From contig NC_043008.1 of the NCBI RefSeq assembly GCF_006345805.1, positions 4,402,001-4,466,000 on the forward strand: DNA of 64,000 bases. Direction: 5' to 3'. Shown here piece after piece: positions 1,148 through 61,849 of the stretch (within the stretch, counting starts at the first letter, position 1; each line of letters opens with the position of its first letter). Both the position numbers and the translations under genes were made by a program. This stretch comes from Octopus sinensis (Eukaryota). The notes below the pieces were generated by a model. It worked only from the letters and a program-made list of their open reading frames with translations, made no database searches and was not told the origin of the DNA.

Positions 1148-1184
<37 letters not shown>

Positions 1185-1301
1185 CACTACTACCACTAGT
1201 AGTAGTACTACTACTACTACTACTCTACACTACTACTACAACTACTACTACTACTACTACTACAACTACTACCACCACCACCACCACTACTACTACTACT
1301 A
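1148..1301. repeat. Compound (CTA)n/(CCA)n microsatellite
   Basis: Directly visible trinucleotide array with a short inverted (TAG)n patch near 1197-1207; source of the poly-L and poly-T ORFs. Confidence 0.95.
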
Positions 1302-1830
1302 CACCTCTACTGCCCTTGCTATAAAATCACATTGAAAACTAACTGTAGCTCCTGGTGATACAAAATGCAAACTATAAACTGCGAGGATGTTTGCATCTTA
1401 TTTAAAGAAACCAACGAGAGAGGGCTTCTGTGCATTTGCCTGATCTGCTAAAACCAAAATTGCTTCACTTCCTATCACATGCTACTATCATAATAAGGGT
1501 AAGGGGTATATTGAATCATGTAATCTTTTAATGTCCCTGGTTATAAGCCTGCTCAGTCAGGGTTTACAACAACTGAGTCTACGAAATCAACAGAAAAGAA
1601 AATGATTTTGTGATTTTTCATTAAATTGCCAAAAGTAAAAGCAAAAGTAATCCCAATTAAACATAATCAAAACATATTACTCGTTAGAAGGAACTGGAAA
1701 AATATGCAGGTGCAACTATAACTGTGTTGATTGCAGCCTGCAATTAACAAATGCCTTTTTGAATAGAATTCTAAAGAAAGAAACAATGCAGGTGCACACC
1801 AAATATGGAAATAGCTTTGTTCTAACTTTG

Positions 1831-4559: not shown

Positions 4560-6750
4560 GACACCAGAAAATGCAACAAGTAGGACATCTCATAGAATAT
4601 CTTGTAGTATTTGACATTACTATCTGCAATTTTAGTTCAAAGTTCACTGTGGTCAGCTTAGCCTTTCAACTTTTCAAGGGATTAGAGTGAATATCAAAGT
4701 TGATGCTAAAAGAAAAATGTATCAAAGTAAAACTAAGTTTGCCAAACCATTACATCTTGCAACATCTATGGTGGGAACAATACATGACAACAGAGAGAAA
4801 ATTATGTCCAGATCTAATGTAATGCTAAAATGGAAAAACACTTGAGCATATAAACTGAGGATCAGAATCAGCATAATGTTACACTAATATAATGGTAATT
4901 AAAAGAAAAGCCAGAAGTTTATATGACAATTTGCCAAAAAAAGAAGTTGAAACTTCCAATGAAAAACCTCTTTTGGCTTATAAAGGATGGTTTAAAAGGT
5001 TTAAGAAGCGTATGGCTTTGCACAACATAAAAACGACTGGTGAAAGTGCGAACACGGATACAGAGGCTGCTACTAATTATTCTAAGCAGTTGAAGAGAAT
5101 TACTGCTGTAGGGGGCGACATACTTGAGCAAGTATACAATGTTGATGAGACTGCACTTTTCTGGAAGTGCATGCCTCTTAGAACTTTTATTTCTCAAGAA
5201 GTAAAATCCACAGCAGGATTTAAAGCTTCTAAAAAATTCATCTGATACTTCTTTTGGAAGGAAATAACGCTAAAGCCCCTAAACATGTAGCCCTCTGAAA
5301 ATCTTAGGGCTTTCAAGGGTTACACAAAATTTAATCTACCTCTGATTTGGCATTCAAATAAGAAGGTATGGTTGACAAAGTGCTTTTGCAAAGAGAGGTT
5401 TACAAATGTGTTTTGTCCTGTGGTACAAAGGTACAGTAGCAGACCTAATATTTCCAGGAAAGCATTGCTTCTTTTAGACAATGCACTGAGCCACCCAGTA
5501 AACTTAGATAACCTTTCTTTTAGACAATGCACTGAGCCACCCAGTAAACTTAGATAACCTTTCTTTTAGACAATGCACTGAGCCACCCAGTAAACTTAGA
5601 TAACCTTTCTTTTAGACAATGCACTGAGCCACCCAGTAAACTTAGATAACCTTTCTTTTAGACAATGCACTGAGCCACCCAGTAAACTTAGATAACCTTT
5701 CTGATAATAGGAGAGTAGAATATATCACCCAGAATACATTTCTTTCTCCAGCCAATGGATCAAGGTGTGATAGCTAACTTCAAGGTATGTCAGAACTCTC
5801 AAACAGTTTATGAAAGTGACTGACAGGAAGGATAAATCTAAATTTAGAGATTTCTAGGAGAAATTCAACATAATGGACGATGTGAATAATATAGCTGAGT
5901 CATGGGTTGAAGTGAAACCTTCAACTTTGAATATAGCTTGGAAAAGTATATGGCCAGACTGTATCCATGGCATTACAAGTTTTCCTCAAGCAGAAAGTTT
6001 ACATCAAATCCGGAAAGATATGGTGACACTTGCAAAGGATGTAGGAATTGAAGATGGTATGACTGAGTTGCTAGTGTCCCATGGAGAAAGTTTATCTAAC
6101 AAGAAGCTGAGAATACAGATGAGACAATGGATGTTCCTCCTGCACCACTTAATCTGACTACAAAAGTTATTGGTCAAGGGTTGGTACTTCTCGACAAAAG
6201 GTCAGCAGGTTTTTGATGGTAAAGATCTCAGTCATGAATGCAACCTAAATATTACAAGAGGCGTTGAGTATGAGCTCAGTTCCTATACTGAACTATTCAA
6301 AGAGATGATGCATCATAAACAACAAACAATTTCAAGCTGATGGTTGTGGTAACAAACTACAAGATCGTCTACATTGTCCTTCGTCCTCCTCGTAATGCCC
6401 ATTCCACCCCCCTGCAGCCCCATCTTTTGTAGCTTGATCTTACTCTCATGATATTACGATTCTTATTAGTTCATTGATCTCTTAAAATGTTTTTGTGTTT
6501 TTCATGTCCGTATATATTTTTACCCTGTATGTTTAGAAATGGTTATTTTCCTGTATAAAGGTGAACACATTGCAGGTTCTCTGTTGTTTCCTTGTGCTTT
6601 TATTTTTCTTTTTAATCCGTAGCAATGCAATCTCGTAATATGAAAATCAATAGGAAAATTAATAATTAATTTTGCCTTACAGAATTTCACATTATGGCAA
6701 GATTTTCAGGAATACAAATGCATTACTTCTGTCAACTAAGGTTTCTATAC
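4560..6750 (+). mobile_element. Decayed Tigger/pogo (CENP-B-like DDE_1) DNA transposon
   Basis: ORF 4892-5245 has KGWFKRFKKR and QVYNVDETALFWKCMP.RTFI; 5455-5500 encodes KALLLLDNALSHP; 5873-6157 encodes the C-terminal IAESWVEVKPSTLNIAWKSIWP. Multiple stops and frameshifts. Confidence 0.92.
5469..5702. repeat. Perfect tandem array, 5 x 46 bp, inside the Tigger transposase
   Basis: gacaatgcactgagccacccagtaaacttagataacctttctttta recurs at 5477, 5523, 5569, 5615 and 5661. Confidence 0.97.
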
Positions 6751-8284: not shown

Positions 8285-8442
8285 GGTGCAGCTGTGATTC
8301 CACGATAATAAGCTTGCTTTCCAACCACATGGTCCCAGGTTCAATCCCACTGCGTGGCACTTTGGGCAAGTGTCTTTTATTATAGTCTCAGGCCAACCAA
8401 AATCATGTGAGTGGATTTGGTAGATGGAAACTTAAAGAAGCC

Positions 8443-8486
<44 letters not shown>

Positions 8487-8794: not shown

Positions 8795-11108
8795 ATTATT
8801 ATCACACATGCCACTTTTACTCTAACAGACGTTATACCTACTCTATAGCAAAAGAGCAAGCTATATCCTTTGGGTTATTCCTTTCCCTTCAACGTTTTAA
8901 CACCCTCCTTGGAATCCTTGCTGTTCCTAACAAGATTGTTGTATGCAAGTTCCATCCTGATGATAATTTCTAGCCATGCATCCAATCTTTCACTAACCAC
9001 TCCCAGTGCACCAACCATAATCGTTACCACTTCAAATTGCCTGATTATCCATAGTTGACTAATTTCCCACTTCAGCCCCTGATATTTCTCAACCTCCTCA
9101 CTTTCCTTCTCATTCACTCCTGTGGTCCCATGGTTAAGCAATATCCATAATAATTGCTTTCTTCTTCTTTTCTATGATAACAATTTCAGGTTTTCTAGTC
9201 ACAATAAGATCACCACGCTGGATGGCCATGTCCCACAAGATTTTATACTCTTTGTTTTCAGCAGCCGTTTCCAGTTGGTTCTCACACCATTTCTCACTTC
9301 TCGTGTCATACTTATGAGCCTGAGCTTCCAGTGAACCAATCTGCTAATGTTGTCCTGCCTTCTCTTCTACTTTTTCTGTGCAAGCCTCTTACATTCGCTG
9401 ATGATGTGGTTTATTGTTTCACCTTTCTCACCCCACAACTTACAAACTTACTCACTTGTCAATATTGAACTTGACATAGTTCGTTCTCAGTGCCTGTTCT
9501 CTTCCTAGTCCATTCTCAGATCTTGTCTTTGTCAATTCTCTCAGGTATTTCCCATAAGAATTAAGCATACATTATTTTTATTTCCATTAAGGTGTGGTTC
9601 TGTCTTGTTAAAATTTTCCCTTTTTCTCCCTTTTCTTTTGCTTCACCCCTTCTTAGGACTTCTTTCTTTCTTACTCTCGCCATCAATCTCTCCTTTGAAT
9701 TCTTTATATGCTATGCCAGATTATTTTCTTCAGACTTCTCATACATTTCCCAGCTAATCAGACCACTTCCTCTTCTCTCTCATCATACATACATGTTCGC
9801 ATCAATTTTGTGTTGTAATGCCATCATTTTCCTGGTCTTTCTATCAAACTGCTTAAGTTCATCAATTCTCCCCTTTATCACACCAGTCCTCTTCCTTAAA
9901 CCTGCAATGGCCCATCTGCTGACAATCAGTATCTTATTCCTAACACTTAAACTCTAACACCAATTTCAGTCTCTCTTTATATGTCTTTGACAACAGCTCT
10001 TTCATTTTGTCTTTTCCCAAGATGTCCAAGTATTTATGCCTGTTGTCGCCAATTTTCTCCCTAACATAATTCCTCCTATCTTATCATTTCCACCTTACTT
10101 CAATAGTAGAACCCTACATCTTTTTATGCCAAATTCCATTCCTCTGTTTGTGCTAAATGTATGAAATGTCCGTACAAGGGAATCATTCTGTTCACCAGCT
10201 TTCCCAAAGACTTTCAGATCATCCATGAGCAGCGGGTGGTTTATCTTAAATTCATTTCCTCCCCACTTGTAACCAGCCTTTGCCCTTCTCAACCCTAATG
10301 AAAGTGGAAACATACACAATGCAAACAGCAGAGGAAAAAGACTGTCTCCCCCCTGGAATATTCCTCTCTTGATGTTCACAACTCCCAATGTCTGTATTAG
10401 GTCAGCTCAGTCTTCCAGCCATTCATATTTTGCTCACCAGAAAGTTTCTAGCGTTAGCTGCCATACCAAACATATGCAAACATTCCAACATCCAACTATG
10501 TGGCACATGTCATAAGCCTCTCAGTAACTGAACCAGGCCACGGCAATGTTTGTGCGCTTTAGCAATCAACAAGTGATCCTTAGTCCCCCTGTTTCTTCTC
10601 CTACATCCCTTTTGCTCTTCAGCTAGTGTCTCTTCTAGGCATTCAAGCATTGCCTCAGCAATGACACCTGTCATAAGCTTCTACATAAAGGAGAAGCAAG
10701 CGAAAGGTCTGAGGTTGTCAACTGCATTTCCTTGGCTGGGTTCCTTCAAACACATGATTGTTCTCCAAAAGGTTGGCCATTCTAGCAACCACTCTTCTCT
10801 AATCAAGATCTTATGCAGTTGTTCAGCAAATCTTCTCATGAAGGACACTCAACTCTTTCAACCAGAACCCTTGCACACCATCTCTGCCAGGGGCTTTCCA
10901 AATTGGCATCTTTCTACACCGGATAGTTACCTTATCAAACACTACCTCTAATTCTTCCTGTTGCTTATCCCCAATGTCATTTTTTACCTTAGTCACCCAC
11001 TGCACACTTCTTTGGTGATCTTTTCCTACACTCCAGATATCATTCCAAAACTCTTCTTTCTCCTGATATTGTACTTCCCTGCAACTTAAAAAACCTGCAG
11101 GGAGGTAC
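8795..11108 (-). mobile_element. 5'-truncated R4/Dong-type non-LTR retrotransposon (RT plus restriction-like endonuclease)
   Basis: Minus-strand peptides [31 protein letters not shown] and INHPLLMDDLKVF (MDDL-type RT motif), GMEFGIKRC, and C-terminal EKYQGLKWEISQLW..VVTIMVGALGVV; short (TAA) tail at 8796-8802. Confidence 0.9.
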
Positions 11109-15119: not shown

Positions 15120-16717
15120 TAATTCAAGACAGTCTGCCCCTGGGAGCTCCTCTATGCTGATGACCTTGCTCTAATAGCTGTGTCTCTATCAGAACTAGAG
15201 GAGAAGTTTCAGGTGTGGAAGCAAGGTCTAGAATCGAAGGGTCTTAGAGTCAATCAAGCAAAAACCAAAGTCTTAGTGAGTAGGAAGGCAAACAAATCAC
15301 AAATCCCTTCAGGTAGACTGCTCTGCTCAATCTGTAGAAAAGCCATTGGTAGAAACTCCATAAATGTACCCAGTGTAAGCTATGGATACATAAGAGGTGC
15401 AGCAATATCAGAGGAAGGTTCAGGCAGTGAGCAGGCAGAAATGTTAGAACATTGGGTGAAGTGGTTAGCGGTATTTCATGTTTTTATGTTCTGAGTTCAA
15501 ATTCCACTGAGGTCAACTTTGTCTTTCGTCCTTTTGGGGTCAATAAGTACCAGTTGTGTACTGGAGTTGATCTAATCGACTGCACCCCTCCCCCAAAATT
15601 TCGAGCCTTGTGCCTAGAGTAGAAATGAATATCAAAGGAAGGTTAAATGAGAAGATAGTTTTTGTGTGTGGCAGAGGCTCAGGAGCAATAAACACTGAAG
15701 ACGTAAAGAAAACAGATTCCATCACATGACAGGGGGAAAAAAACTAGAAGTAGTCGATAGCTTCCATTACCTAGATGACCAAGTCAGGAGCAGCGGGTGG
15801 ATGCTCTGAGAGCATAGCTGCTAGAATAAGAATAGCCTGGGCAGACTTGAGAGCACTCCTACCTCTGCTGGTAATAAAGGGCCTCTCACTCAGAGTGAAA
15901 GGTAGACTGTATGATGCATGTATGCAAACAGCCATGCTACATGGCAATGAAACATGGGCTGACTGCTGAGGACATGCCAAGGCTTAAAAGAAATGAAGCT
16001 CGTATGTTCCTCTGGATGTGTAATGTCAGTGTGCATACTCAACAGAGTGTAAGCACCTTGAGAGAAAATTTGGATAAAAGAAGCGTCAGATGTGGTGTGT
16101 AAGAGAGACAACTCTACTGGTATGGTCATGTGGTGTGTATGGATGAGGATTGCTGTGTGAAAAAGTGTCACACCCTAACAGTGGAGGGAAGCTGTGGAAG
16201 AGGTAGACCCAGGAAGACATGGGATGAGGTCGTGAAGCATGACCTTTGAATGCTGGACCTCACAGAAGCAATGACAAGCAACCGAGACCTTTGGAGATAT
16301 GCTGTGCTTGAGAAGACCTGACCAGCCAAGTGAGATCATAGCCGTGGCTGAGGCCAGTGTCACATAACCAGCCCATTTAAAAGTACCATTCACTTATCAG
16401 GCAATATGCTGTGCCTGAGAAGACCTGTTGAGTCAAGTGAAATCCTTTTTAGTGGCCGATGCCACTGCTGCCTGGCTGGCTGGCTCCCCATGCCAGTGGC
16501 ACGTAAAAAGCACCATTCGAGCGTGGTTGGTGCCAGTGCTGCCTGACTGGCTCCCATGCTGGTGGCACATAAAAAGCACCCACTATATTCTCAGAGTGGT
16601 TAATGTTAGGAAGAGCATCCAGCTGTAGAAACCTTACCAGATCAGATTGGAGCCTAGTCCTCAGTTAAACCGTCCAACCCACACCAGCATGGAAAGTGGA
16701 CGTTAAATGATGATGAT
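15120..16717 (+). mobile_element. 5'-truncated RTE-clade LINE (RT, C-terminal region, 3' UTR, (GAT)n tail)
   Basis: PWELLYADDLAL, GLRVNQAKTKV, EVVDSFHYL, ARIRIAWADLR.LLPLL, VEGSCGRGRPRKTWDEVVKHD; ends cagcatggaaagtggacgttaaatgatgatgat. Confidence 0.95.
15421..15627 (+). mobile_element. SINE family A inserted in the RTE LINE, 17-bp TSD
   Basis: aatatca(g/a)aggaaggtt at 15404-15420 and 15628-15644 (one mismatch); the LINE reading frame resumes across the insertion. Confidence 0.92.
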
Positions 16718-16869
16718 ATGGGAGGGGGGTGAGTAAAAAGGAAAATAGACAAAATTTAAGTATTATAATTGTAGAACATTGAAGAATGCTGATAAGAAAA
16801 GACTTTAAAATGTCATGAAGAGCAGAAGATATCTGATAGGAAAACAGAAATCTTATCTCTGTATGAAAT

Positions 16870-23164: not shown

Positions 23165-23376
23165 TTGTGACAGTGACTGGGCTGTTAGCATGCCAGGCAA
23201 AATGGTTAACAGTATTTCATCCATTCATATGATCTGGGTTCAAATTCCACCACGGTCAACTTTGCCTTTCATCTTTTCAGGGGCAATGAAATATGCACCA
23301 GCTATGCACTGGGGTTAATGTAATCGACTATGCCCCCCCCACCCAAATTTCAGGCCTTGTGCCTATAATAGAAAGG

Positions 23377-33796: not shown

Positions 33797-33830
<34 letters not shown>

Positions 33831-33916
33831 ATGCGTGTGTGTGTGTGTGTGTGGGTGTGTATGCATGCGTGTGTGTGTGTGTATGTGTGTGTGTGTGTGT
33901 GGTGTGTGTGTGTGTG
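33797..33916. repeat. (GT)n compound microsatellite
   Basis: Directly visible. Confidence 0.95.
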
Positions 33917-36267: not shown

Positions 36268-36725
36268 CATTATTATTATTATTATTAATAATAATAATAA
36301 GATGGTGAGCTGGTAGAATCATTAGCAGGCCAGACAAAATACTTAGCATCATTTCTTCTGGCTTTAAGTTCTGAGTTCAAATTCTTCAAAGGCTAGCTAT
36401 GCCTTTCATCCTATCAGGGTCAATAGAATAAGTACCCATTAAGAATGGGCATTGATGTAACTGACTAACTCTATCTGACCTATTATTATTATTATTATTA
36501 CTATTATAAAAAGTTGATGGATTGGTAGAATTGTTAGTGCATTGGGCAAAATACCTTGTGGTATTTCTTCCATCTCTTAAATATTCTGTTATTCAAATCA
36601 TGCTGAAGTCACCTTTGCCTGCCATTTTTTCAGTCTACAAAATAAAAAAAATATTTAAGTGTAAAGAGTTTGTCTATTTCATTGGTTGACCCCTTCCCCT
36701 TAAATTTCTGGCTTGTGCCTATTGT
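35995..36725 (+). mobile_element. Chain of three family A SINEs joined by (ATT)n tracts
   Basis: Copies start near 36000, 36298 and 36510; (ATT)n at 36217-36297 and 36480-36507. Confidence 0.8.
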
Positions 36726-39980: not shown

Positions 39981-40436
39981 TGCATGCAGCCCTAACTCAT
40001 ACATCGAATGTACACACAAGATATATATACCCACCTACATAAGTGTGTGTGTTTATATACATACACATATAATATTGTGTGTGTCTGCTACACATGCTCA
40101 TGCCTCCCAGAAGGCACCCGTGCCAGTGGCACATAAAGAAGCATCGAGCACACTCTGTAAAGTGGTTGGCTTTAGGAAGAACATCTAGCCATAGAATCTA
40201 TGTCAAAACAGACAACTGGGGTCTGGACAGCCTCTGTCAAACCATCCACCCATGGAAGACAGACATTAAATGATGATTTTATACACACACACAGATAGAC
40301 ACAGCCATGTGGTTTCAGATTCTATCCTACTGCTTGCCATCTTAGGCAATGATCTTCTGTTATAGCCTTGAGATGCCCAATGCCATGTGAGTAAAATTAG
40401 TAAACAGAAATTATATGGAACTTGCTTTACATACAG

Positions 40437-40759: not shown

Positions 40760-40878
40760 CAGTCTATACATGCATGCATGTATACATCTATCCATACATA
40801 CATACCTACATACATACATACACACACACACACACATACATACATACATACATACATACATACATACATACATACATC

Positions 40879-40910
<32 letters not shown>

Positions 40911-40960
40911 TACATACATACATACATACATACATACATACATACATACATACATACATA
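40760..40960. repeat. (TACA)n/(CA)n compound microsatellite
   Basis: Directly visible; source of six overlapping artefactual ORFs. Confidence 0.97.
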
Positions 40961-42189
40961 CAATGGGCTTCTGTGCAGTTTATACCAACCAAATTTCATT
41001 TACAAGGCATTGATCAACCCACAGTTATAGTAGCAGACAGGCACCATGCAGTGAGATTGAAACCAAAACCCACCTAGTTGTGAAATGAACATCTTAACCA
41101 CAATACATATAGATATATTGGTACCATGGAAAAGCACCATTATACTCTGTAAACTGGTTGCAGTTAGGAAGGTTATCCAGCCATAGGAACTATGCCAAAA
41201 CCAACATTGGAGCATGATGCAGTCCTTGGACATGCTGGTTCCTGTCAAACAATCCAAGCCATGCTTTCAAGGAAGCTGGGCATTAAATGATGATGATGCT
41301 AATAGTGGTGTTCATGGTGGGTGGGTGGATGGATGGATGGATGACCAAATCAAACCTATATTTTAACTTATCATAGGAAGAACATATTTCTAAAGGAAGC
41401 TATCAAGTGATTCTGCCTTTGTGGTTTAAGGATCAACAGTTTATTAAACATATTTATAAACTTCTTTTCTAAAGTAAAAATATTAACTAATAGTAACAGA
41501 GAGTAGATTAGTTTTATTGTAGTCTCTAGTAGAAAAATACTATTACCAGAAGTTCTTTAACTTTTACCCAGTAATAATTTATAATTATAATAATTATATG
41601 AACTTAAAGCAGTGTTATTGTACTCACCATATTATATATTGGAATTTGTTCAGCAAGAGAAAAACCAATAACACTGTACCTCTACCAGTCTACACAACAA
41701 TCCTAAGATATTTTTATTTATGAGAGAAAAACTTCATTTTTATTAACGTAGATATTACTTTTGACAGTATTCAGTAATTAAATGATATACATTATCTAAT
41801 TATGATATCCTGAGTTGTTAATGTAATAAGATAACTCAACAGTGATTATTTTTCATCATAAATTTGTATGATTATCATTACCACAATTTTTTCTCTATGT
41901 GCTTGGTGTTACTAGTTTGATTTTCACCCTAATATTTCAAATTAGTAGACATATAACTAGATGTATATTATCTAATTATGATTTAAAGAGGTTTTAAATA
42001 CAATAGGTTAATATATGTATGATCAGTTTTATCATAAATTTTGGGGTATTTCGTGAAAGGGGTTGGTGTATGTCTTGCTGATTGTCAATATATTCAAAGA
42101 TAACTCTAAGTTCTGTGATTTCAGCAGAGTTAAACACTGTTGATTGTTTTTTTTTATGTTCTCCCCAACTACTTATGCTTTTAGTATTT

Positions 42190-42570
42190 ATGCATAGCCT
42201 TGTGGTTAGGGTGCTGGACTCATAATCATAAGATCACAAGTTCAATTTGCAGATCAGGCAGCACAATGTGTCTTTGAACAAGACATTTCACTTCACATTA
42301 CATGTGGTGCCACATCAAAGCATCCAGCACACTGTGTAGAATAGTTGGCATCAGGAAGAGCATCCAGTCATAGAATCAGACTGGGGTACAGTGCAGTCCC
42401 CCTTCTCACAGCTTGCCAGCTCTGGTCACACTGTCCAATCCATACCAGCTCTGGTCACACTGTCCAATCCATACCAGCTCTGGTCACACTGTCCAGTCCA
42501 TACCAGCTCTGGTCACACTGTCCAACCCATGCCAGCATGGTCAACAGACGTTAAATGATGATGATGATTA
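42190..42570 (+). mobile_element. tRNA-headed SINE with RTE-derived 3' tail
   Basis: Head agccttgtggttagggtgctggactc...aagttcaat; tail ccaacccatgccagcatgg...gacgttaaatgatgatgat matches the RTE 3' end. Confidence 0.7.
42416..42535. repeat. Tandem repeat, 4 x 29 bp (ccagctctggtcacactgtccaatccata)
   Basis: Directly visible with 1-2 substitutions in units 3 and 4. Confidence 0.95.
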
Positions 42571-42864
42571 TTCTAGTCTGTTTAGCTGAAAATGAGAACT
42601 CGCCAAATGCCAGTCCAGCTTTCTTTCCCACCAGTTGTCACATCTTCAATATTCTGTCGGGTCAAGAGGGAAAAAAGCCTAGACTGTATCTATGACTACA
42701 CAGGCACCTAATGCAATAGGTGAAAGCAAGGTACATACATGTTGCCAAGCCTTACTTGCTTCCAAACAACAGCTACGGTTTTAAGAGGGGGGGTATCTTG
42801 CTTCTTTCCTTTTTCCTGTTTCCTTATTTTTATTTTGTTCAATGTCATTAAAAATAACAACAGC

Positions 42865-43912
42865 TAATTTTCCTTTTGAAAGTAGATTCTGCTTAAATAA
42901 AGACTTACTACTTTATATTTAAGGATTTCATTAAGTTGAGTCAGTGAAGATGGTTGTTTTTCTTCTAGCGCTGCTGACTTGAGCCACTCAAGCTGCTTGC
43001 AGTAGATCTCCTTTGTTATAGTCTGGTTTGAGTTTAAAAGTTCAAAGTAGACTAAACCTATCATCCCCCCCACCCCACCCAAACAGATAGCAACTCCTTA
43101 TGTGGGTGTAGACCTTCTTTAGCTGGGAGGGGGGGCGGAGTTTCTCCCTTCCCTACCTTCTGTCTTCAGCACTTGATATTTTTATAGAGATGCCCATTTC
43201 TTGTCACCAGTCAGAATTCGGTTAAAATAAAGTTCATTTGTCAGACCTGACAGCAAAGAAGAGCCCACATTCACTCTCTGAGCACGATTAGACTTGGAAA
43301 GTTTGTGAGGGATCCATTGACCCAATTTGCCAACTTTTCCAGTGGCATGCAGGTGTCGATGAATGGTTGAATGAAGTAGCTTCTCTGCTTGTTCCTCAAC
43401 AGTTACAATGGGATTTTGTTCCACCAGAGTTTACAGGATGTCCTCATTGAGCTCCACAGATCTTCCAGGATGAGGCTCGTCTTCTAGGCTGTAGTTTCCA
43501 TCTCAGAATTTTTGGAACCACCGTTGGCACTGGCTTACACTTATTGTCTGATCCCCATATACTGCATTAATATTCCTCAAACTTTCCATTGCCTGCTGTC
43601 ACTTCCCTTCCGTGGCCACCACCATTGTCAGTTGGCATGGTCGATGCGGCTGTGGCAGCAGCAACAGCAGTTGTGAGCTCACAAATATATAACGAATATA
43701 ACTCAGAAAGCAAAATAAAGCTGAATATGCTCTTTTGTCACTTCCATTATAGCTTTGAAAAAATAACTCTTCAAAACTTGCACTAAGAATAAGCACAAGG
43801 TAAAATTACTACCTGCTTTTATAGATAGTTGATGCAGGTAGTTTATCGTGTCCCCCTTCAACCTTTCGTTTATGCAATTGAAATAGACCGCATTATTTAT
43901 GGGATGACCCAA
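42865..43912 (-). mobile_element. Decayed mariner (DD34D-type) transposon, 3' end deleted
   Basis: TIR-like TTGGGTCATCCCATAAATAATGCGG at 43888-43912; peptides MEVTKEHI, RNINAVYGD, GQWIPHKLS (WVPHEL motif), RILTGDKKW, GLHPHKELLSVW, GLVYFELL..NQTITKEIYCKQL. Confidence 0.92.
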
Positions 43913-44270: not shown

Positions 44271-44956
44271 AAATATGTTTCTATTGTTAAACATTATTGC
44301 TAAGAAGCAACTAAACAAGTAAGAAATATTTTCTCTTCTTCAATGAAATAAAATGGATGAGTTAATCAAAATCACACTTCTGTCTTTGCTTCAAGGCTGC
44401 TAATTGCTATCTTAACTATTTTCATTATGAGTACAATGGTCATAGGAATACAATGAACCAAGCACACACACACACACGCACAACATTATGATTGCTGCTT
44501 AGAGAAAAGGGGGAAAAAACTGAAATGGAGAAGGATTTTATTGTAATCAGTTCAATATAATCATCATCATCATCATTTAATGTCTGTCTTCCTTGTTGGT
44601 ATGGATTGAAGTTTCCTAAAGTACAAATTTCTTTCAGTGTCCAAATGTGTATGTGTGTGTATGTGTGTGTGTGTGTGTGCGTGTGCATGTGTGTGTGTAT
44701 GTGTGTGTGTGTGTGCTCATCATCACCATCAATCTTTAACATCCATTTTCTGCTAGCATCAGTTGGATGGTGTGACCAGAGTTGGTAAGCTGTAGAGCTG
44801 CACCAGGTTGCAGTCTAATTTGGTGGGGTTTCTACCCTTCCTAATGCCAACTACTTTACAGTGTGTGCTAAATGCTTTTAATGTGGCATTGGCAAGTGTG
44901 TGTGTGTATACATTTAGATAGATAGACAGATATCGATATATTTATACATGTATATA

Positions 44957-45741
44957 TGATATGTCCCACATTATGACGATGTATTTCATTGTCTGCATGG
45001 CTGGCCCTTACGGCATATCTCACCAACTCACACCACTTGCTGTGTCTGTCCATTATCAGTAGTGGAACAGCCCACCTCTCACTTGGGGGTGTCCACCACA
45101 ACACATCCCACCTTTGAGATTTGTTTTTTTTCTTCTTTCACACATTATTTTTCTCTTCAGAAGGCCACAGGTAGTACTGGTCTACATTGCTTACCGGTAG
45201 CGCTACTAACACATAGCAACTTGACTTAAATCCTTCAAATTTTTCACCATGTGTAGTTCTTCCAGTTTGACACCCCTACAAGTGTTTGTAACTTTGTTAC
45301 CACGGTCATAATGACACTGTTATACAGTGGGTGGTATTCTCATTGCCACTGATATGTCCCACATTATGACAAAGTAATTCCTTGTCTGCATGACTTGTTC
45401 GTACGACACACCTCACTGACTGTATTTCTTTATTTGGCACATAGGCCATGATACAGATGGAGACGGCACAAGGTCAGACAGAACACCACAGTGGGGACAA
45501 AAAGCATAAAAGGAATGAATGAGAGATAAATAATAATTAATGAGGATGTAATGGCTGCTTGAACCCCACTCTCAAGCAGTAACTGTTTTAACAAAGCACA
45601 ATTCGACTTAGTCAACCAGAACCAAAAATGATTTAACACTAACAAAAATAACTCACAGACTGACACCACTTGCTGTGTCTGTCCACTATTTATCAGTAGT
45701 GGAACAGCCCACCTCTCACTTGGTGGGTATTTGCCACAACA
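44957..45741 (-). mobile_element. Miniature non-autonomous LTR retroelement (LTR-PBS-246 bp-PPT-LTR, 5-bp TSD ATATA)
   Basis: Direct repeats 45350-45741 and 44957-45103, both TG...CA on the minus strand; PBS TGGCAATGAGAAT at 45348-45336; PPT AAAGGTGGGA just before the 3' LTR; ATATA at 44952-44956 and 45742-45746. Confidence 0.85.
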
Positions 45742-46844
45742 ATATATATTGATGAATGGCTAACTGTTAAAGCCATGCATCAAACAACAATACCTTGTGC
45801 CATTTTGTTAGCTGTGTTATGTCTCTGATGTTGATGTAATTTGATAAATAGAGGGCGATAAAATAAATACTTCACAAGTACCAGGATTAATAGAACTGAT
45901 TAAAACTCTTTGAGGTGATGTCCCAGCAATGCCACAATCCAATGACTATTATCAGTGAAAGACAGAAAGATGATTTTATAAAATATCACACTATATTGTA
46001 TTATGTGTATTAAATGTAATATTTTTAGTAGATTCAAAATGTATTATTTTACTACAAAGAACCATCTATACATACCCAAACATGAGTTTTTTAATGAATA
46101 TATGCATGTGAATGTGTGTGAGCATAGGAGTGTGTATGTGATTGAGAATGTGTGTCTATATATGTGTGCATGTGAGTGTGTAAGTGTATGGATGTGCACA
46201 CATGATGTGCATCGACCGAATGGTTTCGAAATTTTTCTTTTTCTTTTTGCCATAGAATAGAAAGCTAACCTTTTGACAATGACTAACTGTTGGACCCCAG
46301 CAAACTAACCGTACTTTAACTTAATAATTAAATTCTCAATGTTCTGTAGAAAACACATAGCACCAGGAAACATCTAGCTATATCGAGACACAATAGTTCT
46401 AAAGATGTCTGTGGCTAAAAAGCGAAAGGAAAAAAATAGATATATTGTAAATTTTTAACTCTCATCTACGCACTCTTGTAGGGTGTTGAGCAAAAGTGAA
46501 TGATCATGAAAAAGTCTCTTTTACAAAAATGAAATAGAATTGGAATAAAATCCATTGTTTAACAAAATAGTCGTACTGAGATGCGTATCACTTCTTATTT
46601 TCTTGATAAGAGATTTTTTAAAAGAATTATCATCTTCTCCAACCCCAGCCCCCTGTGCTTCACCAGAGATTTTATTACACAATGTCACAATTTTCTAAAC
46701 ATAATAGTTAAAATTATGTCATAGCTCTGTATTATGTACATATTATATAATAGTAATAATTCAACATGAACATTATATATACACACACATGTATATGCGT
46801 GTGTGTGTGAAAATATGCATATATGTATGTATTGTATTTTATAA

Positions 46845-47451: not shown

Positions 47452-47668
47452 TTGGTTTCACTTTTTGGCAGAAGGCCGGCAGCTTCGGGTAGGGGATAAA
47501 GTGATTAAATCAACCTCAAAGCTCAACTGGTCCCTACTTTATTAACCCTGAAATGATGAAAGGCAAAGTTGACCTCGAAGGAATTTGAACTCAGAACATA
47601 GCAACAGGCGAAATGCCACTGAGCATTTTGCCCTGCATGCTAACGATTCTGCCTGCTCACCACCTTAA
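47452..47668 (-). mobile_element. SINE family A
   Basis: gatgaaaggcaaagttgacctcgaaggaatttgaactcagaac...ctaacgattctgcctgctcaccacctt is the reverse complement of the family A consensus. Confidence 0.85.
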
Positions 47669-48039: not shown

Positions 48040-49195
48040 ACACAACATACATCCTCAGCAAAAGGCATTCTGCTTCCTCAAGTTTGTGAAAACAAATTTG
48101 GTTGTCATGGTGCAGTATGCTTTTCGAAGGCAATTCAACATTAATCCCCCCTCTCCTAAGAACATTCAATGGTGGTTTCAACCGTTTCAAGAGAGTGGGT
48201 ATCTGTGTAAAGGAAAAAGTCCAGGATGACCATGAGTTTCGGAGAAACATGTGGCGAGAATCTGTGCCGTGTTTGAGAGGAACCCATGGAAGTCCACAAA
48301 TCGAGCTAGCCATGAGCTTACAATCCCTCAATCCACGATCTGATGTGTGGTAAGAAGATGTCTACATTTGAAACCATACAGACTACGCTTCATTCAGGCA
48401 CTTACCAATAATTACAAGAGGAAGCAGATGGAATTTTGCAAATCGATGCTGGAGATGATGGAAGATGAAACCTTCATTTCACATTTAATTTTTAGTGATG
48501 AAGTGACTTTTCACTTGAGTGGCGCAGTCAATCGTCACAATGTGCATATTTGGGGAACAGAGAACCCACATAAAACAGTTGAGCATGAAAGAGAATAAGG
48601 TGAATATCGTCTGTGCTGTTTTTGGTCCTTTTTTCTTTGAAGGAAACCCCATTACAGGACAAACCTATCTTGATATGCTCCAAAACTGGATCTTCACTTC
48701 ACTGTAAGCAGATTTGCATGAATTTATTTTTCAACAAGATGGTGCACCGCTCCATTGGCACCTGATGATTTGAGCTTTTTTTAAATGGAAAAGTGTCCCA
48801 GTGATGAATCGGTCAGAAAGGGGCCCAAGACCTTGTTCTTTGTGCTTGGCCTGTGAGATCCCCAAACCTCACCATGTGTGATTTTTTCTTGTGGGGATAT
48901 GTAAAATATTGTGTTTATGTTCCACCGCTCCCGACTAACCTCTGTGAACTTAAACATCAAATAACAAAAGCAATCAACTCAGTGGATCATGATATGTTGA
49001 TACACATCTGGGAGGAATTCTCTTATCGCATAGATGCTGCCCATGCTGCAGGTGGTGGCCACATTGAACTCTTGTAAGACAGGAAGTAAAAATTGATTGT
49101 GAGTAAATACTTGTGACTTAGCTGGAGTTTTCTATTGCTTTTCCTTATTAAAATATCGTGTAATGTAATCGGTTCATTCTTTTTGAATAACTCTG
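48040..49195 (+). mobile_element. Decayed Tc1/mariner transposon of the rosa/DD41D-like group, right TIR intact
   Basis: QQKAFC, LIFSDEVTFHLSGAVNRHNVHIWGTENP, FQQDGAP, WPVRSPNLTMCDFFLWGYVK, GGGHIELL*; right TIR ...ggttcattctttttgaataactctg|ta. Confidence 0.93.
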
Positions 49196-50172: not shown

Positions 50173-50339
50173 TGACAGACAGACAGACAGACAGACAGAG
50201 TCAAAGACAAAGAGAAAAAGCATAGAAGACAATCTGCAACTACTTGCAACTACATAGGTACCTGAAACAATGAGTGAAAGTGTGGTACAAGGTCATACTG
50301 GTTTGTGAGAGAGACAGCTAAACCAGGTTCCATATATAT

Positions 50340-50371
<32 letters not shown>

Positions 50372-50424
50372 TTAATGTCCGCTTTCCATGCTAGCATGGG
50401 TTGGACGATTTGACTGAGGACTGG

Positions 50425-50462
<38 letters not shown>

Positions 50463-50619: not shown

Positions 50620-52625
50620 TGCTGGCATGAGTTGGACTGGTTGGTAGGAGCTGGCAAAACCAAGCACCATAGCAAGCTTCCTTGTCTGATTTGGCATCGT
50701 TTGCTGAAGATTCCATCCTAATCCTAATGCCAAAAACTTTACAGAGTGTACTGGGTGCTTTTTATGCAGCATCAACACCAGTGCTCTTTACATAACACTG
50801 TCACCTAGTAACTTACAAGACAAAAAAAAGCAAAACCCCCTCAACTGGTAGTGGGGGGGGGAGTAGTGTTGAGATGGGTGGCTTTGTGCCAGTTGAGAGA
50901 TTGAAGAGGGACAGAAATGAGTGTCTTACTGTAGATGTAGATACATGGATACCTGAGTTGGATAAGAAAGGTGAGTGAGTAAAAGAGTAAGATAAAAGTG
51001 AGTGAGGAGTGAGGGAGGTGATGGCAAAGATGTGTTGGGACATGTCTTCAAGGGACACTGGGAGTGGTGATAACAGGTGAGGTGATACAGAGGTTTGAAC
51101 CGGGTGAGTGAGCAGGATAGAAGTTACTGTTGCAAATGATGGAGAGAAATAGAGAAGCTTAGAGGCAAGAATTGCAGCAGAGAACATTCAGGTGTTAATG
51201 ATTGAGAAAAGCAGGAGGAGGAAGGAAGAGAAGATAGAGAAAGGAGGGAATTGGGCAAGGGAAGCTAATAGAAAACGAAAGTGAAAGTGGTTTGGGATGG
51301 AGAGGAAAGTTAAGTGAGGAAGCGAGAGGGATGTAGTGTGTGCCTATTCTGCTCTCAGCAGATGGAGGAGTGATGGGTGTATGTGCAAGGGGAAGTTGTC
51401 AAGGGAAGAGAGGACAGGTGAGGGAGGGGCAGAACCCCTCACCAGCAACCATTACTAAGGTGATTCTAGGATATCAACTCTGTGGTGGTGGATGGATTAT
51501 CTTGAGTACAGCAAGGCACCAGATACCTCAGTCCTTTGTCATCTCATTCATAAGGTTAAGTGTCTTGATGTCAGCCTTTAGTACTTCATCCCATGTCTTC
51601 CTGGGGTCTCCCTCTTCCACAAGTTCCATCCACTTTGATTGGCACATCTTTATGCAACTGTCCTCGTCCACATGCATCACATGACCAAACCAATGCACTC
51701 TTCTTCTCTCTTGCATTCTGCTAATTCCTCTTATACCTAACTTTTCTCTTAATATTCTTGTGCTCCGTCACACATGCATACTGGCATTGCACATCCAGCA
51801 GAGCATACTGGCTTCATTCCTTCTAGTCTTTGCATGTCCTCTGCATTCAGGGTCCACGTCTCACTACCATGTAGCATTGCTGTTCATACACATGCATCAC
51901 ACTTTCCTTTCATCTGAGGGAGAGAGAGAGAGAGAGAGAGAGACCTCTGGTTGCCAACAGAAACAAAAGAACTCTGAACTTACTCCATCTTATTCATATT
52001 CTAACAATTACACTTTTGGTACCTCCTCCTCCACGGCTAATTAAGGTCACCTAGGGAGCAGAAATTATCATCTACCTCTAGAGAGTCTCTGGAGCATTTG
52101 AGAAAATCAAGTTGTCATGTATCTATAGACTTTATGACTCTTGTGCAGCTTCCACACACACACACACACTATTAACCATCTTATTATTCCACTGCACCTC
52201 TTGTGCGTCCAAAGTTTGCACTGAGTACACCATGTGCAATTCCTGCCAACACCTTTTCTACATATGAAGCAGGGCCGTTTACTTGGAGTGGGTAGGGTCC
52301 TATCCATTATCTTGTTCGCTATGTTAACTTTAAGGCTCTTCGCTTCCAGGTTTTGCTTCTGGAAGATGATGACGAATAGGATGGAGCTGAGAATCTGGCC
52401 TTCGTAAACACCTACCTAATACTGAATGCATCACTGTACTCATGGCCAACTCTTACATTGCTAACAACACACCTGTACATGGCTCGTACTGCTCTTACAA
52501 GCCACTCATCTAACTCTAGCTTCCACAGAAACCACCGTATCACAGCCAGCTACTTTTTTTTAAGGTTTTCTTCAGATCAACAAATGTCAAGTACAATGGC
52601 TTATTCTTAGCTAAATATGATATAT
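50620..52625 (-). mobile_element. RTE LINE with internal deletions (RT remnants, PHD-like finger, C-terminus, long 3' UTR)
   Basis: Minus peptides KPLYLTFVDLKK, VGVYEGQILSSILF, PCFICRKGVGRNCTWCTQCKLWTHKRCS, RRRVHWFGHVMHVDEDSCIK, PRKTWDEVLKAD. Confidence 0.88.
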
Positions 52626-53419
52626 AATCATCATCGTTTAACGTCCGTTTTCCATGCTGGTATGGGTTGGACGGTTCAACTGGGGTCTGGGAAGCCAGGA
52701 AGCTGCACCAGGCCCCAATCTGATCTAGCAGCAGCACTGGCATCAGCCACGTTTTGACGGTGCTTTTTCCATGCTACCAGCACAGGGGTCACAACTACAA
52801 TTTCCATTTGATTTGATTTTGATACACACACACACACATATGCACACAACACACTGAAAACCATTGGAATTGAGATATATTCAAACTCCTCTTTGCTGCA
52901 GGTGCAATAAGAATGTGAAGTCATTCTTTCCACATTTTTGCAGAGCAAACAAAAGAAGGATGTTCTGACAGTTTGTTTCATGAAGCAATGCCTGACTTTC
53001 TTCTGAAATCAACAGCACAGATCAGCTGATACAGAAAGCATTCATGAATCACACTAATCCACTGGTGGATAACGGAGCTTTTATATTTTATGCCATCATC
53101 TTCATCAGTTTAACTTCCACTTTTCCAGGCTCACATGAGTCAGATAGAAATTTGTCGAGGCAAACTTTCTACAACTGGATGTCCTTCCTGTCATCAACCC
53201 TCACCTGTTTCCAGGGAAGATTATAGTTTCCTATCACCTGACATGTTTTCATGGAAGACTGGAAACAAAGAATGCTGCTTGCACGACAATGACTCTAATT
53301 CACAATTATAACATGACATGGAGACAGTAACACACATGCATGCACACACACACACACACATGCACACATACATACATATATATGTATGTATGTATGTATG
53401 AGGTCTTGGAAGGGTAAAT

Positions 53420-61116: not shown

Positions 61117-61849
61117 CAGGGTGCCCCAGAATTAACTATCATCATCATCATCATCATCATCATCATCGTTTAACGTCCACTTTCCATGCTAGCATGGGTT
61201 GGACAATTTTGACTGAGGGCTGGCGAACCAGATGGCTGCACCAGGCTCCAGTCTTGATCTGACAGAGTTTCTACAGCTGGATGCCCTTCCTACTCTGAGA
61301 GTGTAGTGGGTGCTTTTTACGTGCCAGCTACTCTGAGAGTGTAGTGGGTGCTTTTTACGTGCCACCGGCATGGGGGCCAGTTAGGCGGTTAAATTTTTTT
61401 TAAAAACTAACAGAATTTTATGCTTATTACTTAATTAGAATACCTACAACAAATAGATTTATCAAAAGTTTATTGAAATTTTCAACATGTGCTCCGTTTA
61501 TATCATTGCAAATTTCACGTCTATCCTTAGTGTTGCAAAACATGTTTTGAAGCATTTCAGGTGTTATCACCTGCACTGTTAGCTGAATCCATTCTTTAAG
61601 TCCAGCTAAACTATTGCTCCATCCCAGAAATGGAGGGAGAGAAAATGATTGCAGCCAAATTGAAACTGAGCTGTCATGGACACAGGTAAGCAGGAGCCAA
61701 CAGGAATGAAAAGAAAATTATTTTCAAAAATTATAAAAATTATAAACAAAATCAAAAATTTATACACTTTTAACACATAAATAAAAGCGAGTTTTTAAAA
61801 AAAAATGTCCAATTTCACTGGAATAGCTGATTAATTCTGGGACACCCTG
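61117..61849 (-). mobile_element. Internally deleted Tc1/mariner (rosa-like) element with both TIRs and TA TSDs
   Basis: ta|cagggtgccccagaattaa ... ttaattctgggacaccctg|ta; minus peptide LAGLKEWIQLTVQVITPEMLQNMF...REIC..INGAHVENF is a transposase C-terminus. Confidence 0.9.
61139..61397 (-). mobile_element. RTE 3'-end fragment inserted next to the left TIR, with a 38-bp internal tandem duplication
   Basis: (CAT)n-cgtttaacgtccactttccatgctagcatgggttggac; duplicated unit at 61290-61364. Confidence 0.88.

What the first reader, a model, noticed from the sequence alone, without database searches (positions are those of the whole stretch)
44952..45746. Complete miniature LTR retroelement (TRIM-like) with tRNA-Ser-type PBS, PPT and TSD
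Seen: two diverged direct repeats with TG...CA ends, PBS one base after the 5' LTR, only 246 bp of internal sequence, PPT abutting the 3' LTR and matching ATATA flanks. From memory, TGGCAATGAGAAT differs by three transitions (two CpG-type) from TGGCGACGAGGAT, the complement of the 3' end of metazoan tRNA-Ser(GCU) used by some Gypsy elements. All cis signals for reverse transcription are kept while coding capacity is lost. Established: TRIMs are well known in plants and sparsely reported in animals. No ORF-based annotation would detect this element.
Basis: partly seen in the sequence, partly recalled or inferred. Interest (0 to 1): 0.7.

Follow-up and report, generated by a model that had tools for sequence, protein, structure and literature searches.

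The report
Decayed miniature LTR retroelement in octopus DNA
This is a 785-base, non-coding, long-dead copy of a small LTR retrotransposon in an octopus-type genome; the kind is already known in plants and several animal groups, so it is a modest catalogue entry.

Summary
They are two direct repeats with TG...CA ends, a TGG-initiated primer-binding-like site one base after the upstream repeat, a 246-bp non-coding interior, a purine-rich stretch against the downstream repeat, and ATATA on both flanks. Together these are far beyond chance (about 5e-8 for one repeat pair).

The long repeat carries about 226 extra bp bounded by an imperfect 14-bp direct repeat. This is either a nested retroposon insertion or a repeat-mediated deletion in the other LTR.

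The host is an octopod: many interspersed repeats are shared with Octopus sinensis and O. bimaculoides loci.

An old (K2P 0.134), inactive, non-coding LTR retroelement is well supported. Two claims could not be tested, because no other copy and no host tRNA set was reachable:
- membership of an amplified TRIM family, as opposed to a one-off internal deletion;
- the tRNA-Ser(GCU) primer assignment.

TRIMs are already described in insects, cestodes, bivalves and other animal phyla. At best this is a new member of a known kind. Interest is low to moderate.

The parts
44952..44956 (.). Left copy of the 5-bp target-site duplication, ATATA
   Evidence: It is identical to 45742-45746. It is low-complexity (a TA-run target), so its weight as evidence is moderate. 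The chance of a 5-mer match at this spacing in the window is 0.0018.
44957..45103 (-). 3' LTR, 147 bp, TG...CA ends (short version)
   Evidence: Aligns to both ends of the 392-bp LTR at 129/147 identity, K2P 0.134. nhmmer E 9.7e-51 against the LTR profile.
45104..45115 (-). Purine-rich stretch abutting the 3' LTR (AAAGGTGGGATG, 10/12 purines), the candidate polypurine tract
   Evidence: The window-wide frequency of >=10/12 purines at a given place is 0.045.
45120..45139 (-). Cleaner purine run (19/20 purines), 16 nt upstream of the LTR edge
   Evidence: It may be part of, or the original, polypurine tract. This is inferred.
45104..45349 (-). Internal region, 246 bp, non-coding
   Evidence: No ORF longer than 55 aa lies wholly inside it. 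No protein homologue. The RNA fold is not unusual, z -1.13. No similarity elsewhere in the window or in 66 kb of fetched loci.
45336..45348 (-). Primer-binding-site-like TGGCAATGAGAAT, one base (G, 45349) after the 5' LTR
   Evidence: It matches the recalled tRNA-Ser(GCU)-type complement at 10/13, and all mismatches are GC->AT transitions. It matches the documented tRNA-Ser-GCT-type PBS of bivalve Helenus-3/6_PiIm at 8/11 over the shared TGGCGACGAGG, and Aplysia tRNA-Ser-GCT at 7/13.
45350..45741 (-). 5' LTR, 392 bp, TG...CA ends (long version)
   Evidence: Its two ends (45350-45421 and 45648-45741) match the short LTR.
45422..45647 (+). About 226 bp present only in the long LTR. Either a nested retroposon (A-rich end ...AACAAAAA on the + strand) or original LTR sequence deleted from the other LTR
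   Evidence: Gap in alignment A1. No tRNA-like or other Rfam match. No copy elsewhere. On the minus strand it contains AATAAA, an AT-rich TATA-like stretch, and an 8-bp-stem hairpin at 45555-45579.
45408..45421 (.). Left copy of the imperfect 14-bp direct repeat bounding the extra segment (ACACCTCACTGACT)
   Evidence: It is 11/14 identical to 45648-45661. The short LTR has a single copy at 45015-45028.
45648..45661 (.). Right copy of the 14-bp direct repeat (ATAACTCACAGACT)
45742..45746 (.). Right copy of the 5-bp target-site duplication, ATATA

Best explanation
This is a fossil copy of a small non-autonomous LTR retrotransposon of TRIM type, lying on the minus strand of an octopod genome.

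Inferred life cycle, from the established mechanism of LTR retroelements:
1. An RNA running from the 5' LTR to the 3' LTR was packaged and reverse-transcribed by proteins supplied in trans by an autonomous element. In Octopus that element is most likely Gypsy-type.
2. Minus-strand synthesis was primed by a host tRNA annealed to the TGG... site one base after the 5' LTR.
3. Plus-strand synthesis was primed from the purine tract next to the 3' LTR.
4. Integrase joined the TG...CA ends into a TA-run, duplicating 5 bp (ATATA).

After insertion the copy decayed. The LTRs diverged by about 13%. The primer-binding site accumulated GC->AT transitions. One large event made the LTRs unequal. That event was either a retroposon landing in the 5' LTR with a roughly 14-bp target duplication, or a 240-bp deletion in the 3' LTR between two 14-bp repeats.

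Shown: the anatomy, the absence of coding capacity, the divergence and the host clade. Inferred: mobilisation in the short form, the identity of the primer tRNA, the partner element, and which of the two indel scenarios is right.
For: - Direct repeats with exact TG...CA borders.
- TGG one base after the 5' LTR, a purine-rich tract against the 3' LTR, and a 5-bp identical flank.
- Joint chance of these hallmarks is about 5e-8.
- The plus-strand reading gives no TGG after the left repeat and no purine tract before the right one.
- No ORF or protein homologue in six frames.
- Total length is 785 bp, under the 1000-bp TRIM limit (PMC10886601).
- The two repeat copies sit 246 bp apart, yet there is no further copy in 64 kb of window plus 66 kb of other loci. 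They are therefore linked by structure and are not two hits of an abundant repeat.
- Host is octopod: 112 shared interspersed-repeat hits with O. sinensis and O. bimaculoides loci at 75-96%, and an RT ORF 81% identical to an O. bimaculoides protein.
- All 275 classifiable LTR elements that LTRharvest found in O. bimaculoides were Gypsy (PMC6238403).
- All PBS mismatches to the Ser(GCU)-type sequence are transitions. Chance is about 1e-4 per tRNA, or about 0.005 for some 50 tRNA ends.
Against: - Only this one copy is known, so transposition in the short form is not demonstrated.
- The LTRs differ by 240 bp. This shows that large rearrangements did happen at this locus, which makes an in-situ internal deletion credible too.
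- The TSD is a low-complexity TA-run.
- The abutting purine tract is imperfect (10/12).
- The PBS has 3 mismatches in 13, where about 0.9 would be expected from the LTR divergence.
- The only documented mollusc tRNA-Ser-GCT (Aplysia) matches poorly, at 7/13.
Confidence: 0.55

Rival explanations
1. One-off deletion derivative. A full-length autonomous LTR retrotransposon (probably Gypsy) inserted here and later lost its whole gag-pol interior in situ. Only the leader next to the PBS and the tail next to the polypurine tract were left. There is no TRIM family.
For: The anatomy, TSD, PBS and PPT fit this reading equally well. The locus demonstrably suffered another 240-bp indel inside an LTR. No second short copy was found anywhere searchable.
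Against: No remnant of coding sequence is detectable in the 246-bp interior, so both deletion end-points would have had to fall in untranslated regions. The interior length is typical of TRIMs. The searches that found no copies did not cover any whole cephalopod genome, so their silence says little.
Confidence: 0.3
2. Anatomy variant A. The true LTR is about 150 bp, and the 226 extra bp are a later non-LTR retroposon (a SINE or a 5'-truncated LINE, on the + strand) inserted into the 5' LTR with a roughly 14-bp target-site duplication.
For: A 14-bp direct repeat (11/14 identical, as expected at this age) exactly bounds the segment, and it is single-copy in the other LTR. The segment ends in an A-rich tail (...AACAAAAA) against the right repeat. 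A hairpin lies near the 3' end. LTRs of about 150 bp are the classical TRIM size. SINE-into-LTR insertion is a documented route (PMC10886601).
Against: No tRNA-like or other known RNA-derived head. No second copy of the segment in the window or in the octopus loci, although octopus SINEs are abundant there. The roughly 150-bp LTR would have no AATAAA signal.
Confidence: 0.5
3. Anatomy variant B. The true LTR is about 390 bp, giving an element of about 1.03 kb at the upper edge of TRIM/SMART size. The 3' LTR lost 240 bp by slippage or template switching between two 14-bp repeats.
For: On the element's strand, the extra segment supplies what a Pol II LTR needs. It has an AT-rich TATA-like stretch, and about 100 nt downstream an AATAAA placed about 75 nt before the LTR end. 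Deletions between short direct repeats are a common mutation and a common reverse-transcription error.
Against: AATAAA and AT-rich stretches are expected by chance in 35% GC DNA. A 14-bp repeat is long for slippage. The A-rich end next to the repeat looks like a retroposon tail.
Confidence: 0.4
4. Not an LTR element at all. Two neighbouring copies of some other short repeat, or a local duplication, happen to carry LTR-like hallmarks.
For: The TA-run flanks and the imperfect purine tract are individually weak.
Against: The joint probability of the hallmarks is about 5e-8. Neither repeat has its own target duplication; only the outer flanks match. It is not a simple tandem duplication, because the right end of the long repeat aligns to the short repeat and not to the interior. 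The repeat is absent from 130 kb of other sequence.
Confidence: 0.04

Closest known systems
TRIMs (terminal-repeat retrotransposons in miniature; Witte et al. 2001, as summarised in PMC10886601 and PMC6934838)
   Same: Two terminal direct repeats with TG...CA ends, a short non-coding interior bounded by a PBS and a PPT, a 5-bp TSD, and a total length under 1 kb.
   Different: Only one decayed copy is known. The LTRs are unequal (392 against 147 bp). Family amplification and an autonomous partner are not shown.
biv-TRIM of bivalve molluscs (Satovic et al. 2019, PMC6934838)
   Same: A mollusc host, miniature LTR architecture, and a purine tract at the end of the interior. One cloned copy there also has an unrelated insertion in a terminal repeat.
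   Different: biv-TRIM has 202-218-bp repeats, a 77-80-bp interior, a GGGGAGA tract and no clear PBS. Its conserved interior motif TGATCCCAAAGGAC is absent here. No sequence relationship is shown.
Helenus / Ajax / Cassandra (TRIMp3; Kojima 2024, PMC10886601)
   Same: Animal (including mollusc) non-autonomous LTR elements. Some bivalve Helenus use a tRNA-Ser-GCT-type PBS (TGGCGACGAGG...), which resembles the decayed site here. The proposed origin is a SINE landing in a TRIM LTR, which resembles anatomy variant A.
   Different: No tRNA-like or 5S-like sequence in these LTRs. Animal Helenus make 4-bp TSDs; this element has 5 bp.
Internally deleted Gypsy elements and LARD/SMART-type non-autonomous LTR elements
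   Same: LTR-PBS...PPT-LTR without coding capacity, dependent on a partner's proteins.
   Different: LARDs are many kb long. Deletion derivatives usually keep recognisable gag/pol fragments, and none is detectable here.
17.6/297-type Gypsy elements of Drosophila (recalled, not tested)
   Same: From memory, these have a tRNA-Ser primer and insert into TATA-like sequence, both reminiscent of this copy.
   Different: This is a lead only.

Membership tests
TRIM | Two terminal direct repeats (LTRs) of roughly 100-250 bp (up to a few hundred) with TG...CA ends | tested here: met
   147-bp and 392-bp repeats, 87.8% identical over 147 aligned positions, both TG...CA. Caveat: a 240-bp length difference.
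TRIM | Total length under about 1000 bp and no protein-coding capacity | tested here: met
   785 bp. ORFs are at most 79 aa. The six-frame query found no homologue at E<=0.01.
TRIM | PBS complementary to the 3' end of a host tRNA just after the 5' LTR | tested here: inconclusive
   TGG starts one base after the LTR. It matches a recalled tRNA-Ser(GCU)-type complement at 10/13, with all mismatches transitions. It matches documented Aplysia tRNA-Ser-GCT at 7/13. No octopus tRNA was available.
TRIM | Polypurine tract just before the 3' LTR | tested here: met
   10/12 purines abut the LTR, and a 19/20 purine run lies 16 nt further in. Background frequency is 0.045.
TRIM | Target-site duplication (usually 5 bp) | tested here: met
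   ATATA on both sides. Only 5 bp fits. The target is a low-complexity TA-run.
TRIM | A family: several copies with the same short interior at different loci, each with its own TSD | not testable with these tools
   No whole cephalopod genome is searchable here. Results were negative in the window, 44 kb of Octopus loci, viral, metagenome and prokaryote contigs, and the protein collection.
TRIM | An autonomous partner sharing LTR ends or PBS | not testable with these tools
   No LTR-retrotransposon protein remnant was recognised in the window. Octopus LTR elements are reported as Gypsy (PMC6238403).
Helenus / TRIMp3 | A tRNA- or 5S-derived Pol III promoter sequence inside the LTR | tested here: not met
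   ARAGORN found no tRNA. Rfam at E<=10 over 44700-46000 gave no tRNA or 5S match.
biv-TRIM | The conserved interior segment TGATCCCAAAGGAC, a roughly 80-bp interior and 202-218-bp repeats | tested here: not met
   The motif is absent from the element at up to 3 mismatches. The dimensions differ.

The most novel reading that the evidence does not exclude
This copy belongs to a so far undescribed, multi-copy TRIM family of cephalopods. The family would be primed by tRNA-Ser and would target TA-runs. This individual copy would have caught a retroposon landing in an LTR, which is the first step of the route proposed for the origin of Pol III-driven TRIMs (TRIMp3).
Probability: 0.12. Interest if true: 0.45.

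Novelty: new member of a known kind. Interest (0 to 1): 0.25.

Why it matters
If a family exists, it would extend TRIMs to cephalopods. LTR elements make up less than 1% of those genomes, and LTRharvest-based surveys deliberately drop short non-coding copies (PMC6238403). It would then give a handle on which autonomous element is or was active in trans. As a single 13%-diverged relic it has no functional consequence that I can see. Its practical value is as a seed for repeat-library curation and as a reminder that ORF-based annotation misses such elements.

Tried and rejected
**Searches for other copies (all negative)**
- Window self-blast and an nhmmer LTR profile.
- Exact 21-mers from the two best-conserved LTR parts in viral contigs, metagenome contigs and genome contigs.
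- A six-frame translation of the whole element against the 5.8-billion-protein collection, hoping for spurious ORFs called on other copies.
- Exact look-up of the element's ORFs and other window ORFs.
- 44 kb of O. sinensis and O. bimaculoides loci.

None of these collections holds a whole cephalopod genome, so the negatives do not bear on copy number.

**Other tests that led nowhere**
- Empty-site test inside the window. The left flank is an octopus SINE copy that ends near 44900. No repeat spans the insertion point, so no paralogous empty site exists.
- tRNA-like or other structured RNA in the LTRs or the extra segment: none. A Helenus-type reading is rejected.
- Structured interior RNA: not significant, z -1.13.
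- Plus-strand reading of the element: rejected, because there is no TGG after the left repeat and no purine tract before the right one.
- Simple tandem duplication: rejected from the alignment geometry.
- Host tRNA genes in the window and the fetched loci: none.
- L001 (ENA ERZ25067864) turned out to be another eukaryote, not the host.

Full report
**What is there**

Read on the minus strand, the region contains the following.
- A 392-bp direct repeat, 45741->45350.
- One spacer base, G, at 45349.
- The sequence TGGCAATGAGAAT, 45348->45336.
- A 246-bp interior in all, 45349->45104.
- A 147-bp direct repeat, 45103->44957.

Both repeats begin TGTTGTGG and end ACATATCA. Similarity stops exactly at those TG and CA dinucleotides. 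The five bases outside each end are ATATA on the plus strand (44952-44956 and 45742-45746). Duplications of 4 or 6 bp do not fit.

The 12 bases that abut the downstream repeat are 10/12 purines. A 19/20-purine run lies 16 bases further in.

**Is it more than chance?**

The repeat similarity is significant. blastn gives E 2e-25 and 2e-13 for the two blocks. MAFFT gives 129/147 identical positions.

I measured how often each hallmark occurs at an arbitrary place in this window:
- 5-bp flank identity: 0.0018
- TGG within 0-3 nt: 0.057
- at least 10/12 purines: 0.045
- TG plus CA: 0.0059

The product is about 5e-8 over both orientations. This holds even allowing that the TA-run flanks are a weak duplication and that the abutting purine tract is imperfect.

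Other readings fail:
- The plus-strand reading has no TGG and no purine tract in the right places.
- Neither repeat has a duplication of its own.
- The geometry excludes a simple tandem duplication.

An integrase-made LTR retroelement is therefore the only reasonable reading of the anatomy.

The two LTRs are not equivalent. The long one carries about 226 extra bp (45422-45647). This segment is bounded by an imperfect 14-bp direct repeat (45408-45421 and 45648-45661, 11/14 identical). The short LTR has that repeat once (45015-45028).

Two readings remain open.

(A) A non-LTR retroposon inserted into the 5' LTR after integration.
- For it: the 14-bp target-like duplication, the A-rich end against the right-hand repeat, and a hairpin near that end.
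- Against it: the segment has no tRNA-like head. It also has no second copy in the window or in 44 kb of Octopus DNA that is otherwise full of shared SINEs.

(B) The LTR was originally about 390 bp, and the 3' LTR lost 240 bp between the two 14-mers.
- For it: on the element's strand the segment supplies an AT-rich TATA-like stretch and an AATAAA about 75 nt before the LTR end.
- Against it: those signals are cheap in 35% GC DNA.

I cannot decide between these from one copy. Either way the event affected one LTR only. It therefore arose either after integration or, for a deletion, possibly as a copying error while the two LTRs were being synthesised.

**No coding capacity**

ORFs in the element are at most 79 aa. 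A concatenated six-frame translation found no protein at E<=0.01 among 5.8 billion. The interior RNA is not unusually structured (z -1.13). Rfam finds nothing at gathering thresholds and only chance-level matches at E<=10.

**Age and state**

The LTRs differ at 18 of 147 aligned sites (10 transitions, 8 transversions; K2P 0.134) plus small indels. This is an old insertion. With the disrupted LTR and the decayed primer-binding site, it is an inactive copy.

**Host**

The window is 35% GC and crowded with microsatellites and transposon debris.
- It shares 112 interspersed-repeat matches (75-96% identity) with one locus each of Octopus sinensis and O. bimaculoides.
- One RT-derived ORF is 81% identical to an O. 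bimaculoides protein.

The host is therefore an octopod. I did not determine the species.

**Primer-binding site**

The next base would be a fourth.

The first eleven bases of that target are documented as the tRNA-Ser-GCT-type site of bivalve Helenus-3/6_PiIm (PMC10886601). The site here matches them 8/11.

For one specified tRNA, a random TGG-initiated 13-mer reaches 10/13 with probability 0.0019. It does so with only transitions as mismatches with probability 1e-4. That is roughly 0.09 and 0.005 for about 50 tRNA ends. This is suggestive, not proof.

Against the assignment:
- The only mollusc tRNA-Ser-GCT end I could document (Aplysia) has a different acceptor stem and matches 7/13 ungapped, no better than His, Ile or Ser-TGA.
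- Three mismatches exceed the roughly 0.9 expected from the LTR divergence.
- No octopus tRNA was available.

The assignment stays a lead.

**Is it a TRIM?**

Structurally it meets the definition used in the literature: under 1 kb, two LTRs, PBS and PPT at the ends of a short non-coding interior (PMC10886601; PMC6934838).

The defining biological feature is a family that transposes in this short form with help from an autonomous partner. That could not be tested. Every search for another copy was negative. None of the collections I can search by DNA holds a cephalopod genome, so these negatives are uninformative.

The main rival is a full-length Gypsy-like element that lost its interior in situ. 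It is weakened by the lack of any coding remnant. It is strengthened by the evidence that this locus did suffer a 240-bp rearrangement.

I put the TRIM-type reading at 0.55 and the one-off deletion at 0.3.

It is not a Helenus/TRIMp3 element, because there is no tRNA- or 5S-like LTR sequence. It shows no relation to biv-TRIM.

**Known or new?**

TRIMs are well known in plants. In animals they have been reported from Hymenoptera, taeniid cestodes and bivalves. As Helenus they are reported from six animal phyla, including molluscs (PMC10886601; PMC6934838).

I found no report for cephalopods in the searchable literature. The one large survey of mollusc LTR elements classified only protein-bearing copies; it found 275 in O. 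bimaculoides, all Gypsy (PMC6238403).

At best this is a new member of a known kind. As a single relic it is of low to moderate interest.

Noticed in passing
window 44718-44900; also 61144-61329, 50333-50427, 52624-52731, 16458-16719, 47494-47667, 23184-23329, 36299-36466, 8306-8464, 40115-40277, 42308-42600: Several families of SINE-like interspersed repeats are shared at 75-96% identity with Octopus sinensis and O. bimaculoides loci. This identifies the host as an octopod. One copy, followed by a TG microsatellite, lies directly left of the element.
   Followed up: partly
window 4877-6316, tandem array 5469-5702: A Tigger/pogo transposase remnant (HTH_Tnp_Tc5; about 74% nucleotide identity to the tigger-derived gene of Octopus). 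It is broken across frames and interrupted by a perfect 46-bp x 5.1 tandem array.
   Followed up: partly
window 8866-10700 (-), 15121-16317 (+), 51531-52415 (-): Remnants of non-LTR retrotransposon reverse transcriptases (RVT_1 with a C-terminal zinc-knuckle-like CxxC motif). One is 81% identical in protein to an O. bimaculoides RT.
   Followed up: partly
window 42867-43430 (-), 48344-49074 (+): ORF fragments that, by eye and from memory of transposase motifs, look mariner/Tc1-like. Pfam gave no match to the three fragments tested. One hit, a Cryptotermes protein named odorant receptor (63% identity over about 10% of the concatenated query), may belong to one of them, but I did not map which query segment it aligned to.
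   Followed up: no
window 45555-45579: A perfect 8-bp-stem, 9-nt-loop hairpin (CTGCTTGA / TCAAGCAG) inside the 226-bp segment found only in the long LTR. It could be a retroposon 3'-tail structure or an LTR element. Unexplained.
   Followed up: partly
window 1148-1302, 40766-40962, 33798-33916, 42416-42543, 61290-61364: Very dense simple repeats: (CTA)52, (ATAC)50 and (TG)60. There are also short tandem arrays inside SINE copies: 29 bp x 4.4, and 38 bp x 2 at 100% identity.
   Followed up: no
L001 (ENA ERZ25067864, 506-kb contig): A contig filed under a metagenome assembly is eukaryotic. It carries exon-like calls with dsrm and A_deamin domains (ADAR-like) next to an RT element. It is not the host species, since only the RT matches, at 69% nucleotide identity.
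   Followed up: partly
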